A stretch of 64,000 bases of DNA from IMG/VR virus record IMGVR_UViG_3300042319_002138, positions 124,001-188,000 of that record; one strand, written 5' to 3'. Each line of letters opens with the position of its first letter. Positions within the stretch are counted from its first letter, which is position 1. A program made the translations under genes and the position numbers. Positions 60,627-61,529 of the stretch are shown one piece after another. The notes under the pieces are model-generated. The model worked only from the letters and a program-made list of their open reading frames with translations. It was not told the origin of the DNA and searched no databases.

Positions 60627-61529
60627 ATGAAAAAAACTATTAGAAAAGTATTAAGAGAAGAACAATTATCATTGTTCGATGATTACGAAGACACCAGTTA
60701 TAAAATATGTTCCCATTTTAAAGATGAGGACCAGCAGAACCTATGTTCAAATTTAAATTCTCTTGGTAAATTTTTATATTCAGAGGATGGTTTAGGTTTA
60801 CAAAGAATCATTGATTTTAAAACCAACCAAATGAAAAAACTTGTTGATTTAAACAATCAATACCAAGAACCACTAGCTATTTTATGGGAAACAGGTAAAT
60901 ACAATCAATCAGGTAGATATGATTATATCTCAAAAGAAAATGACTACTATCAAAATGAGGCCATGAAATCTGTTAATAGAGTTTATGATGATAATGGTAA
61001 ATGGGATTCTATTAATAAATTAAACACAAATTATTCTGATTTAGCTGAACTATTAACAGAATTATTTATCAGAGGTAATATGGTAGGTACCCTAAAAGAT
61101 AAAAACGCTTTAGGATTAAGGAAGTATCTTATATCTATTAAAGATAAGTTAGAAAGAGTTATAGATAAGTATATAAAATTAGATGAGTTTAAATCTTTCG
61201 TAAGAAATACAAAACACTTATCAAAAATAGGTGAAAAAGCTGAAAACGATGTTAAAAACATTTTAACAAAGGCTCAAATAGATACAGTGTATCAGGGGGG
61301 TGATGGGGACTTTGTTGATATGATTTTTGGTGTAGACCTTATAGTGAATTCTGGTGGTGAGGTTTATACGATACAAGTTAAGAGTAATGAGATTCAGGCA
61401 AAAGAATCTAGAGGATTAAAAAAATATGGAAAGATTGACTTTACTGCTTCACCTACCGATTATGGTATTATTATGTTTGATATAGATAATAACGAATTAA
61501 AATTCGATAAAAATGGTGATGAAATCTAA
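60627..61529 (+). CDS. putative virion-associated PD-(D/E)XK-like nuclease
   Basis: MKKTIRKVLREE leader followed by QLSLF. C-terminal GEKAENDV...DMIFGVDLIV...TIQVKS. Confidence 0.55.
   Translation: MKKTIRKVLREEQLSLFDDYEDTSYKICSHFKDEDQQNLCSNLNSLGKFLYSEDGLGLQRIIDFKTNQMKKLVDLNNQYQEPLAILWETGKYNQSGRYDYISKENDYYQNEAMKSVNRVYDDNGKWDSINKLNTNYSDLAELLTELFIRGNMVGTLKDKNALGLRKYLISIKDKLERVIDKYIKLDEFKSFVRNTKHLSKIGEKAENDVKNILTKAQIDTVYQGGDGDFVDMIFGVDLIVNSGGEVYTIQVKSNEIQAKESRGLKKYGKIDFTASPTDYGIIMFDIDNNELKFDKNGDEI

What the first reader, a model, noticed from the sequence alone, without database searches (positions are those of the whole stretch)
60627..61529. Leader-bearing nuclease-like protein with a beta-clamp-binding motif right after the predicted cleavage site
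The sequence reads VLRE-E-QLSLF. QL[SD]LF is the canonical bacterial DnaN clamp-binding motif. The C-terminus resembles a PD-(D/E)XK fold (E...D...QVK). Inference: an injected nuclease directed to host replication forks. The gene sits immediately downstream of the two Mom-like genes, which could protect phage DNA.
Basis: partly seen in the sequence, partly recalled or inferred. Interest (0 to 1): 0.6.

Follow-up and report, generated by a model that had tools for sequence, protein, structure and literature searches.

The report
Phage nuclease with leader and clamp motif
A gene of an uncultured giant T4-like phage encodes a DNA-cutting enzyme whose floppy front end carries a short tag shared by many of the phage's proteins (probably a capsid-loading tag that is cut off), followed directly by a textbook docking motif for the bacterial DNA sliding clamp; it may therefore be an enzyme delivered to, or tethered at, the host's replication machinery, but this is not proven.

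Summary
Window 60627-61529 (+) is a real 300-aa gene with more than 230 metagenomic phage relatives. Its C-terminal 100 residues model confidently as a minimal PD-(D/E)XK nuclease, with invariant E206, D237 and Q250-x-K252. Residues 22-200 form a confident domain with no known fold. Residues 1-22 are disordered.

The 11-residue leader is about 35 times enriched at N-termini and sits on 14 unrelated proteins of the same phage. That phage has a T4-type prohead protease and gp23-type capsid protein. The leader ends in I/L-x-E, like the T4 gp24 and gp23 propeptides.

QLSLF follows directly. It shows the Q-L-x-L-F conservation pattern in 107 of 124 relatives at 45% identity or more. It is the only strict copy in 70,304 residues (0.08 expected). 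It is placed in the canonical pocket of E. coli DnaN in silico (0.68 against 0.00 for controls).

Fusion proteins keep an internal leader plus motif at the junction.

Cleavage, packaging, clamp binding and the DNA target remain inferred. The family also occurs, without the motif, in related phages that lack Mom. I class it as a new variant of known kinds.

The parts
60627..61529 (+). Gene for the 300-aa protein P0001 (stop codon included)
   Evidence: ORF list and translation. The identical protein is found on 15 or more contigs. 238 relatives were found.
60627..60659 (+). Leader, residues 1-11 (MKKTIRKVLRE). Family consensus is M-[KR]-x-[LTI]-I-K-K-I-L-K-E, ending in an I/L-x-E site.
   Evidence: Column counts are I5 51/55, I8 51/55, L9 53/55 and E11 55/55. 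The pattern is about 35 times enriched at N-termini. It sits on 14 ORFs of the 226-kb same-species contig. It is disordered to helical in the model, with pLDDT below 50.
60663..60677 (+). QLSLF, residues 13-17: a look-alike of the beta-clamp-binding pentapeptide
   Evidence: Sequence. Conservation pattern Q-L-x-L-F. Docked into the E. coli DnaN pocket at residues 172, 174-177, 242, 247, 320, 344, 346, 360 and 362-366.
60690..61226 (+). N-terminal domain, residues 22-200. It holds an invariant C28/C40 pair and the invariant block K131-L-N-T-N135...D138-L-A-E-L142. No known fold.
   Evidence: AF2 model of the domain alone has pLDDT 92.3. The best PDB match is Z 3.7 and Foldseek E is above 1. Atlas TM is 0.31 or less.
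61221..61526 (+). C-terminal PD-(D/E)XK nuclease domain, residues 199-300. Putative catalytic residues are E206 (nt 61242-61244), D237 (61335-61337), Q250 (61374-61376) and K252 (61380-61382).
   Evidence: Alpha-beta-beta-beta-alpha-beta topology. VIA Z is 7.5 for 2ost, 7.3 for 1ob8, 7.1 for 1gef and 6.5 for 4qbn. Foldseek gives the same families weakly. The residues are invariant. Atlas look-alikes carry RE_MjaI, Mrr_cat, RE_TaqI or Hjc.
59085..60612 (+). Two Mom-like genes immediately upstream (59085-59816 and 59818-60612). These are context and are probably co-transcribed.
   Evidence: Pfam Mom 1.1e-22 and 1.1e-54. The adjacency is kept in relatives at 40% identity or more. Mom is absent from distant genomes that carry homologues.
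62485..63855 (+). Neighbouring 456-aa ORF with the same leader (MRNRIRKILKE...) and an acidic-Trp motif; function unknown
63855..64000 (+). Start of a 142-aa ORF with the same leader (MRNLIKKILKE-STDPDW...); it runs off the window
44264..44533 (+). 89-aa ORF with the same leader (MKSLIKQVLKE...)

Best explanation
P0001 is a phage-specific two-domain nuclease. It has a new N-terminal domain and a minimal PD-(D/E)XK catalytic core with E206, D237 and Q250-x-K252. Its disordered N-terminus carries two short signals in tandem.

Signal 1 is an 11-residue leader shared by at least 14 otherwise unrelated proteins of the phage. I read it as a T4-style capsid-targeting propeptide. On this reading it brings the protein into the prohead and is removed after I-L-x-E by the phage's T4-type (Peptidase_S77) prohead protease.

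Signal 2 is E-QLSLF, which cleavage would leave at the new N-terminus. It is a consensus bacterial sliding-clamp-binding motif.

The most likely course is as follows. The trimmed nuclease travels with the DNA into the next cell and docks on DnaN clamps loaded on host DNA. There it cuts DNA, causing host shut-off or fork collapse. Phage DNA is spared because it carries Mom-type adenine modification, or because it bears no loaded clamp, or both.

Shown here: the gene, the fold, the invariant catalytic-type residues, the shared N-terminal leader, the presence of the protease and gp23-type capsid protein in the same phage, clade-wide conservation of Q-L-x-L-F, and in-silico docking in the canonical pocket.

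Inferred: cleavage, packaging and ejection, real clamp binding in the (probably Bacteroidota) host, the DNA substrate, and protection by Mom.
For: Fold and residues.

Leader:
- It is enriched about 35 times at N-termini.
- It sits on 14 ORFs in the 226-kb contig, including a 174-aa ORF lying between the prohead protease and the acidic scaffold gene, and two ORFs just after the capsid gene.
- The protease family hit is Peptidase_S77 at 2.7e-28, and there is a gp23-type capsid protein.
- The capsid protein has ...L-I-N-E|T-D-T-S-G-G at about residue 59, where T4 gp23 has L-T-E|A-E-I-G-G. T4 gp24 starts MAKINELLRE|ST, close to the leaders here, which read ...KILKE|ST.
- T4 uses a conserved capsid-targeting sequence on diverse internal proteins, and can package a nuclease through it (PMC3012670).
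- Fusion proteins (HD domain + module, 110-aa domain + module) keep an internal leader copy plus the motif at the junction. This is as expected for a cleavable linker.

Motif:
- It is the only strict copy in the proteome (expected 0.08).
- It is present in 107 of 124 relatives at 45% identity or more, as QLSLF, QLNLF, QLDLF or QLELF, with a hexapeptide-type QLELDL variant.
- It lies in a segment with pLDDT below 50.
- Docking gives ipSAE 0.68 against a best control of 0.00. That mark was reached by 51 of 78 solved complexes and 2 of 108 mismatches. Run agreement is at least 79% and partner pLDDT at least 45. Contacts run from residues 10-17 to the known peptide pocket.
- No phage-encoded DnaN or gp45-type clamp was detected in five related genomes.
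- There is precedent for a phage protein using QL[SD]LF-type motifs on the host clamp: Mu MuC (PMC12867686).

Mom: adjacency is conserved in the clade that has the motif.
Against: - There is no proteomic or biochemical evidence for cleavage or packaging. The leader's role rests on analogy with T4.
- The docking result may reflect the model's memory of solved clamp-peptide complexes. It used the E. coli clamp, not the host's.
- The motif is missing in 17 of 124 close relatives and in nearly all relatives below 45% identity.
- Homologues exist in phages with no Mom gene, so Mom protection cannot be a general requirement.
- The family is deeply conserved across large T4-like phage lineages that lack a detectable endonuclease VII. 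This also fits a housekeeping nuclease.
- A Mg-dependent nuclease packed next to DNA needs a safeguard, and none has been demonstrated.
- The Z scores of about 7 for the fold are middling on their own.
Confidence: 0.4

Rival explanations
1. The protein is a clamp-tethered nuclease that works inside the producing cell and is not injected. It would be a structure-specific (Hjc-like) or host-DNA-degrading nuclease, recruited by clamps left on replicating DNA. It could resolve branches before packaging or break down the host chromosome. On this reading the shared leader has another role, for example association with the prohead or portal from outside, regulation, or turnover.
For: The family is conserved down to about 30% identity in many large T4-like phage contigs. 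No Endonuclease_7 (T4 gp49) was found in five such genomes, two of them 93-100% complete. Hjc/Hje are among the best structural matches. From memory, not checked here: archaeal Hjc is stimulated by PCNA, and T4 endonuclease VII associates with the portal protein. The motif evidence is the same as above.
Against: The leader is shared with many unrelated proteins, and its best analogues are the T4 propeptide and capsid-targeting sequences. Internal leader copies are kept at fusion junctions. The large extra N-terminal domain is not part of known resolvases. Distant homologues lack the motif.
Confidence: 0.3
2. QLSLF only looks like a clamp-binding motif. It would be part of the family's extended N-terminal targeting or assembly signal, or bind another partner, and the clamp plays no role.
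For: It abuts the leader. Other leader proteins carry a different short motif (acidic-Trp, D-F-D-W-I-K-D-V type) at the same place. A few family members have that motif instead of QLxLF (P0119, L025). The motif is lost in some relatives. Docking can pass from memory of similar solved complexes. The host clamp was not tested.
Against: None of the other 13 leader proteins has QLxLF, so the leader does not need it. The roughly 420-aa forms carry both QLDLF and the acidic-Trp motif in tandem, so the two are not interchangeable versions of one signal. The per-position conservation (Q, L, L and F fixed, position 3 free) is that of the clamp motif. Docking is specific compared with three controls.
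Confidence: 0.15
3. The protein has a nuclease fold but is not a nuclease. It would be a DNA-binding or structural internal head protein that has kept the PD-(D/E)XK scaffold.
For: The third catalytic position is Q rather than E or D. There is no family-level sequence match to any characterised enzyme.
Against: E206, D237, Q250 and K252 are invariant across 55 diverse members. From general knowledge, D...QxK is the normal catalytic variant of Mrr-type enzymes, and the Atlas look-alikes include Mrr_cat and RE_MjaI clusters.
Confidence: 0.1

Closest known systems
T4 internal proteins and other gp21 substrates (IPI-III, Alt, gp24, gp67): capsid-targeting sequence and propeptide
   Same: A short N-terminal tag of about 10 residues is shared by otherwise unrelated proteins of one phage. 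It ends in I/L-x-E. The phage encodes a Peptidase_S77 prohead protease and a gp23-type capsid protein. The T4 gp24 propeptide MAKINELLRE|ST resembles ...KILKE|ST here (PMC3012670).
   Different: There is no detectable homology of the cargo. The tag sequence differs from the T4 IP tag (MKTYQEFIAE, from memory). Cleavage and packaging are untested. The tag is also kept internally in fusion proteins, which is not known for T4.
Bacterial beta-clamp partners with QL[SD]LF or QLxLxL motifs (Pol II/IV/V, Hda, MutS/L; phage Mu MuC)
   Same: The motif matches the consensus exactly and lies in a disordered terminal segment. It is N-terminal like Hda and one MuC motif. It shows the same conservation pattern and docks in the same pocket in silico.
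   Different: The carrier is a phage PD-(D/E)XK nuclease of a new family. Binding has not been measured. The host clamp (probably from a Bacteroidota host) was not tested.
Minimal PD-(D/E)XK nucleases: archaeal Hjc/Hje resolvases, I-Ssp6803I, VRR-NUC, Mrr-type catalytic domains
   Same: A core of about 100 residues with alpha-beta-beta-beta-alpha-beta topology and E...D...(E/Q)xK. Z is 6.5-7.5 at rmsd 2.6-3.3 over 77-90 residues.
   Different: There is no Pfam, NCBIfam or PHROG membership. It has an extra 180-residue N-terminal domain of unknown fold. The oligomeric state and substrate are unknown.
T4 host-DNA nucleases (EndoII/denA, EndoIV/denB) working with phage DNA modification
   Same: The logic is conceivably the same: a phage nuclease spares modified phage DNA. 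Here two Mom-like genes sit directly upstream.
   Different: The fold families are unrelated. The T4 enzymes are not packaged and have no clamp motif. Homologues here also occur in phages without Mom.

Membership tests
PD-(D/E)XK nuclease superfamily | Alpha-beta-beta-beta-alpha-beta core fold | tested here: met
   The AF2 model has pLDDT 89.9. The top 30 VIA matches for residues 199-300 are almost all endonuclease-like folds at Z up to 7.5. Foldseek and BFVD give the same families.
PD-(D/E)XK nuclease superfamily | Conserved acidic and lysine residues: E in helix 1, D at the start of strand 2, (D/E/Q)xK in strand 3 | tested here: met
   E206, D237, Q250 and K252 are invariant in 55 sequences and lie at those structural positions.
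PD-(D/E)XK nuclease superfamily | Metal-dependent phosphodiester cleavage | not testable with these tools
   This needs a purified-protein assay.
Hjc Holliday-junction resolvase (PF01870) | Sequence membership in the family profile | tested here: not met
   There is no Pfam hit at E below 0.1 other than an insignificant SNaCT6. The PDB profile search found nothing. There is only a fold-level resemblance, plus one Atlas cluster with 17% Hjc members at 0.90.
Beta-clamp-binding motif carriers | Match to QL[SD]LF (or QLxLxL) in an exposed, disordered segment | tested here: met
   QLSLF lies at residues 13-17, and residues 1-22 have pLDDT below 50.
Beta-clamp-binding motif carriers | Motif conserved among orthologues while the flanks vary | tested here: met
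   It is present in 107 of 124 relatives at 45% identity or more. Position 3 and the linker are variable. It is not conserved below 45% identity (4 of 46).
Beta-clamp-binding motif carriers | Occupies the hydrophobic pocket between clamp domains II and III | tested here: inconclusive
   In silico only, and with the E. coli clamp. ipSAE is 0.68 against a best control of 0.00. That mark was reached by 51 of 78 solved complexes and 2 of 108 mismatches. Agreement is at least 79% and partner pLDDT at least 45. The pass may come from memory of solved complexes.
Beta-clamp-binding motif carriers | Measured binding to the host's DnaN | not testable with these tools
T4-type capsid-targeted, protease-trimmed head proteins | Short N-terminal tag shared by unrelated proteins of the phage and ending in I/L-x-E | tested here: met
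   14 ORFs in the 226-kb contig carry it. It is about 35 times enriched at N-termini.
T4-type capsid-targeted, protease-trimmed head proteins | The phage encodes the Peptidase_S77 (gp21) prohead protease and a gp23-type capsid protein | tested here: met
   Found in the same-species contig G001 at 2.7e-28 and 3.7e-62. They were not found in the 95.6-kb record that holds the window, which is only 29% complete.
T4-type capsid-targeted, protease-trimmed head proteins | Protein present in virions with the tag removed | not testable with these tools
   This needs virion proteomics of a cultured relative.
Modification-coupled nuclease (Mom protects phage DNA) | Obligate co-occurrence of the nuclease with the modification genes | tested here: not met
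   The genes are adjacent in relatives at 40% identity or more. However, homologues in G003, G004 and G005 (78-100% complete) occur with no Mom gene in the genome.

The most novel reading that the evidence does not exclude
A giant T4-like phage loads a set of enzymes into its head through a common 11-residue tag. One of them is a nuclease that, once trimmed and ejected, uses the host's own sliding clamp as landing pad, and perhaps as activator, to cut host DNA at replication forks. The phage genome would be spared by Mom-type modification or by the absence of loaded clamps. This would be the first virion-delivered effector aimed at the bacterial clamp. It would also define a new, widely spread capsid-cargo tag, including polyprotein-like fusions cut at internal tag copies.
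Probability: 0.25. Interest if true: 0.85.

Novelty: new variant of a known kind. Interest (0 to 1): 0.6.

Why it matters
If true, it would add the replication sliding clamp to the list of host hubs that phage proteins delivered with the DNA strike in the first seconds of infection.

It would also give a simple sequence rule (the leader) for listing the injected cargo of a large, uncultured group of aquatic giant phages. That cargo already includes HD, DHH-type and nuclease domains. The tag could in addition serve as a packaging handle, as the T4 tag does.

Independently of the mechanism, the protein family has a confidently modelled 180-residue domain with no known fold. It is essentially confined to phages, with one MAG hit among 185,579 prokaryote species genomes.

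Tried and rejected
- Family libraries gave nothing significant for P0001: Pfam, PHROGs, NCBIfam and PADLOC.
- The profile search against PDB sequences found nothing.
- tblastn against 50,697 phage records found no match, so no cultured phage in that set has the protein.
- The N-terminal domain alone was tested with VIA wide, Foldseek PDB and the Atlas shape search. There was no credible match: Z 3.7 or less, E above 1, TM 0.31 or less.
- I looked for a phage-encoded clamp that might be the true partner. DNA_PPF, gp45-slide_C, DNA_pol3_beta and DNA_pol3_beta_3 were all negative in five related genomes. Divergent clamps could still be missed.
- I checked whether the phage's family-B polymerase ends in a similar motif, as T4 gp43 does for gp45. 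It does not.
- A Pol III alpha search was negative.
- A literature search for the leader peptide as text returned only noise.
- I looked for promoter evidence on timing. ATATTTATA is about 30 times enriched upstream of structural genes. Only a one-mismatch copy lies 4 nt before this gene, and one-mismatch copies are not enriched overall (133 against 127 expected). I draw no conclusion about timing.
- I considered that QLSLF is merely a variant of the acidic-Trp motif seen after other leaders. I rejected this as the main reading because the two motifs co-occur in tandem in the roughly 420-aa forms.
- I considered that the minus-strand ORFs inside the gene (52 and 76 aa) are real. They have no support and I treat them as AT-rich noise.
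- Tools not used: the large representative protein search was not used, because the word search already gave many relatives. The reads tools were not used. No alternative genetic code was used.

Full report
**Setting**

The window is about 30% G+C, and nearly all long ORFs lie on the + strand. It is part of a 95.6-kb viral record estimated to be 29% complete. The same phage is represented by longer contigs of up to 226-252 kb.

The 226-kb same-species contig, G001, carries a T4-type head module. In order, it holds a large terminase, a portal, a Peptidase_S77 prohead protease (2.7e-28), an acidic scaffold-like protein and a 599-aa gp23-type capsid protein. It also carries a family-B DNA polymerase.

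Most large structural genes in the window have no PHROG family. By capsid protein, the nearest isolates are Microcystis phage Mel-JY01 and Flavobacterium phage 'immuto', at 42-44% identity over about half the protein.

The phage also encodes a CHU_C (T9SS-type) protein, sensor kinases, a sigma-70 factor, SIR2, DnaJ, FKBP, RNase HII and a TROVE-like protein. Bacteroidota-style TAnnTTTG elements occur upstream of genes. I infer a Bacteroidota host; this is not shown.

**The observation**

The ORF at 60627-61529 encodes 300 residues.
- the leader MKKTIRKVLRE;
- E-QLSLF at residues 12-17;
- E206, D237 and Q250-V-K252;
- two Pfam-Mom genes immediately upstream.

The word search found 238 relatives, almost all from aquatic metagenomes. 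A further 225 viral contigs encode a relative. Only one contig of one MAG among 185,579 prokaryote species genomes does so. No record in the phage isolate collection does.

**Fold**

An AF2 model built on 55 non-redundant relatives is confident (pLDDT 89.9, pTM 0.83). Residues 1-22 are disordered.

Residues 199-300 form an alpha-beta-beta-beta-alpha-beta unit. Its best PDB matches are small PD-(D/E)XK nucleases: I-Ssp6803I (Z 7.5), Hje/Hjc (7.3/7.1), VRR-NUC (6.5), tRNA-splicing endonuclease and restriction enzymes. Foldseek ranks the same families, but weakly. BFVD adds phage 'PD(D/E)XK' and 'VRR-NUC' proteins.

Z near 7 is middling taken alone. Three things together make the nuclease-fold reading solid:
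- the list of matches is uniform;
- E206 in helix 1, D237 at the start of strand 2 and Q250-x-K252 in strand 3 are invariant;
- language-model look-alikes carry RE_MjaI, Mrr_cat, RE_TaqI or Hjc.

Membership of any named family is not supported.

Residues 22-200, modelled alone at pLDDT 92.3, match nothing. This domain holds an invariant Cys pair (C28, C40) and the most conserved block of the protein, K131-LNTN...DLAEL.

**The leader**

The same 11-residue N-terminus, M-[KRN]-x-[LI]-I-K-K-I-L-K-E, heads unrelated ORFs in the window at 44264, 62485 and 63855. It heads 14 ORFs in the 226-kb contig. In related phages it heads many proteins, including DHH-type and HD-domain proteins.

Its core pattern is about 35 times more frequent within 10 residues of the start than elsewhere in 1245 ORFs.

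Three leader ORFs lie inside the head module. One of 174 aa sits between the protease and the scaffold gene, and two lie just after the capsid gene.

The leader ends in I-L-K-E. The capsid protein has L-I-N-E followed by T-D-T-S-G-G at about residue 59. This is the position where T4 gp23 has L-T-E|A-E-I-G-G. T4 gp24 begins MAKINELLRE|ST, close to the ...KILKE|ST seen on leader ORFs here.

In T4, diverse internal proteins share only a capsid-targeting sequence, and a foreign nuclease can be packaged through it (PMC3012670).

Longer family members are fusions. In these, an HD domain or a roughly 110-residue domain with its own leader precedes the nuclease module. The junction keeps a full or partial internal leader followed by the motif, for example ...IRKVLKE-DQFELFG and ...LKE-EQLDLFG. 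This is what one expects of a cleavable linker.

Distant homologues have longer N-terminal helices that again end in L/I/M-x-E just before the folded domain.

All of this makes a T4-like propeptide and targeting role the best reading. No experiment supports it yet.

**The motif**

Strict QL[SD]LF is expected 0.083 times in the 70,304-residue gene set of the 226-kb contig, and it occurs once, here.

In 55 non-redundant relatives the columns read as follows:

| Position | Count |
|---|---|
| Q | 42 of 55 |
| L | 41 of 55 |
| position 3 | free: S18, E10, D9, N8 |
| L | 45 of 55 |
| F | 45 of 55 |
| G | 35 of 55 |
| D | 33 of 55 |

A variable linker follows.

A motif of this type is present in 12 of 13, 31 of 32 and 64 of 79 unique relatives at 80% or more, 55-80% and 45-55% identity respectively. 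Below 45% identity it is present in only 4 of 46. Variants include QLNLF, QLDLF and QLELF, and a QLELDL form resembling the hexapeptide version.

A complex prediction of residues 1-45 with the E. coli clamp dimer passed. The score was 0.68 and the best of three controls 0.00. That mark was reached by 51 of 78 solved complexes and 2 of 108 mismatched pairs. The runs agreed in at least 79% of contacts, and partner pLDDT was at least 45.

Residues 10-17 contact clamp residues 172, 174-177, 242, 247, 320, 344, 346, 360 and 362-366, which form the known peptide pocket. The tool warns that such a pass can come from memory of solved clamp-peptide complexes. It therefore shows likeness, not binding.

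No phage-encoded clamp was detected. The phage polymerase does not end in a similar motif. If a clamp is the partner, it is probably the host's.

A recent precedent for a phage protein using near-consensus clamp motifs is Mu MuC (PMC12867686).

**Context**

The order Mom-Mom-nuclease, followed by small capsid-protein-derived ORFs, is kept in relatives at 40% identity or more. Three related large genomes (78-100% complete) carry motif-less homologues and have no Mom gene.

The motif and the Mom adjacency thus mark the same clade. This may be functional coupling or merely shared descent.

None of the five genomes has a detectable T4 endonuclease VII. This leaves room for a housekeeping, resolvase-like role for the family.

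**Verdict**

Its three structural inferences (leader, clamp-type motif, nuclease fold) all survive testing.

The functional story is the most economical way to combine them: packaged, trimmed, injected, docking on host clamps, with phage DNA protected by Mom. I give the full chain about 0.4. A non-injected clamp-tethered nuclease is the main rival at 0.3. A non-clamp role of the motif gets 0.15, and a non-catalytic protein 0.1.

The parts are of known kinds. The combination, the widespread leader system with internal copies in fusions, and the fold-less N-terminal domain are new.

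Noticed in passing
window 61533-61769 and 61729-62154 (+): Two small overlapping ORFs directly after the nuclease are built from pieces of the phage's own gp23-type capsid protein in permuted order. The first matches capsid residues 529-585 at 46% identity. The second matches residues 357-417 at 59% and then residues 79-108 at 53%. The real capsid gene lies elsewhere (G001 27752-29551). The second ORF is conserved next to the nuclease in relatives. It might be a stand-alone permuted capsid subdomain, or one gene read through a frameshift..
   Followed up: partly
window 62485-63855, 63855-64000; G001 ORFs at 10363, 30297, 30691, 222315, 222844: A second short motif, acidic-Trp (D-[FLP]-[DEK]-W-[IAV]-[KR]-[DE]-[IV]-x-P), follows the leader in 8 of 14 leader proteins. 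It co-occurs with QLDLF in the roughly 420-aa family members. The 456-aa ORF at 62485 also has an internal leader-like remnant followed by this motif (...VKESTDPEWEWLNDVP), which suggests module fusion. Its function is unknown..
   Followed up: partly
G001 (same-species 226-kb contig), upstream gaps; window 54588-54596, 46164-46172, 35349-35357, 19003-19011 and others: ATATTTATA is about 30 times enriched in upstream intergenic gaps. It lies 11-21 nt before the start codons of the portal, the prohead protease and several very large structural genes, so it is a candidate phage (late?) promoter element. TAnnTTTG, the Bacteroidota -7 type, is also seen..
   Followed up: partly
L099 7650-15830 (downstream of the window in the same phage): The phage carries a 735-aa CHU_C (T9SS sorting domain) protein, two sensor histidine kinases with PAS/GAF domains, a response regulator, ferritin and a Band_7 protein. 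This is an unusual sensory gene set for a phage and a hint of a Bacteroidota host..
   Followed up: no
window 26287-27036 and 27089-28240 (+): A Cas4-like PD-(D/E)XK protein (PADLOC Cas4 6e-7) sits next to a DruA-like protein (Pfam DruA; PADLOC DruA 6e-9). These are defence-system-type genes inside a phage..
   Followed up: no
window 36497-38037, 53652-58319: There is a phage-encoded sigma-70 factor next to a SIR2 protein. Further on lies a block with DnaJ, a 399-aa unknown, FKBP and a TROVE/DUF2828 'RNA-binding' protein upstream of the Mom genes..
   Followed up: no
BFVD entries A0A8D9CCA0 (1113 aa) and A0A6J5L953 (501 aa, named superoxide dismutase): The whole two-domain module recurs inside much longer uncultured-phage proteins, at Foldseek E 2e-7 and 2e-4. 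This adds to the HD-domain and 110-aa-domain fusions seen in metagenomes..
   Followed up: no
L104 8726-9004 and G001 34262-34690: Two small paralogous ORFs start MKK[VI]IKLNE and carry a second leader-like stretch, LV[QK]K[IV]I[RA]EE, about 15 residues in. One lies between the prohead protease and the leader-bearing 174-aa ORF. They are possible prohead-core proteins..
   Followed up: no
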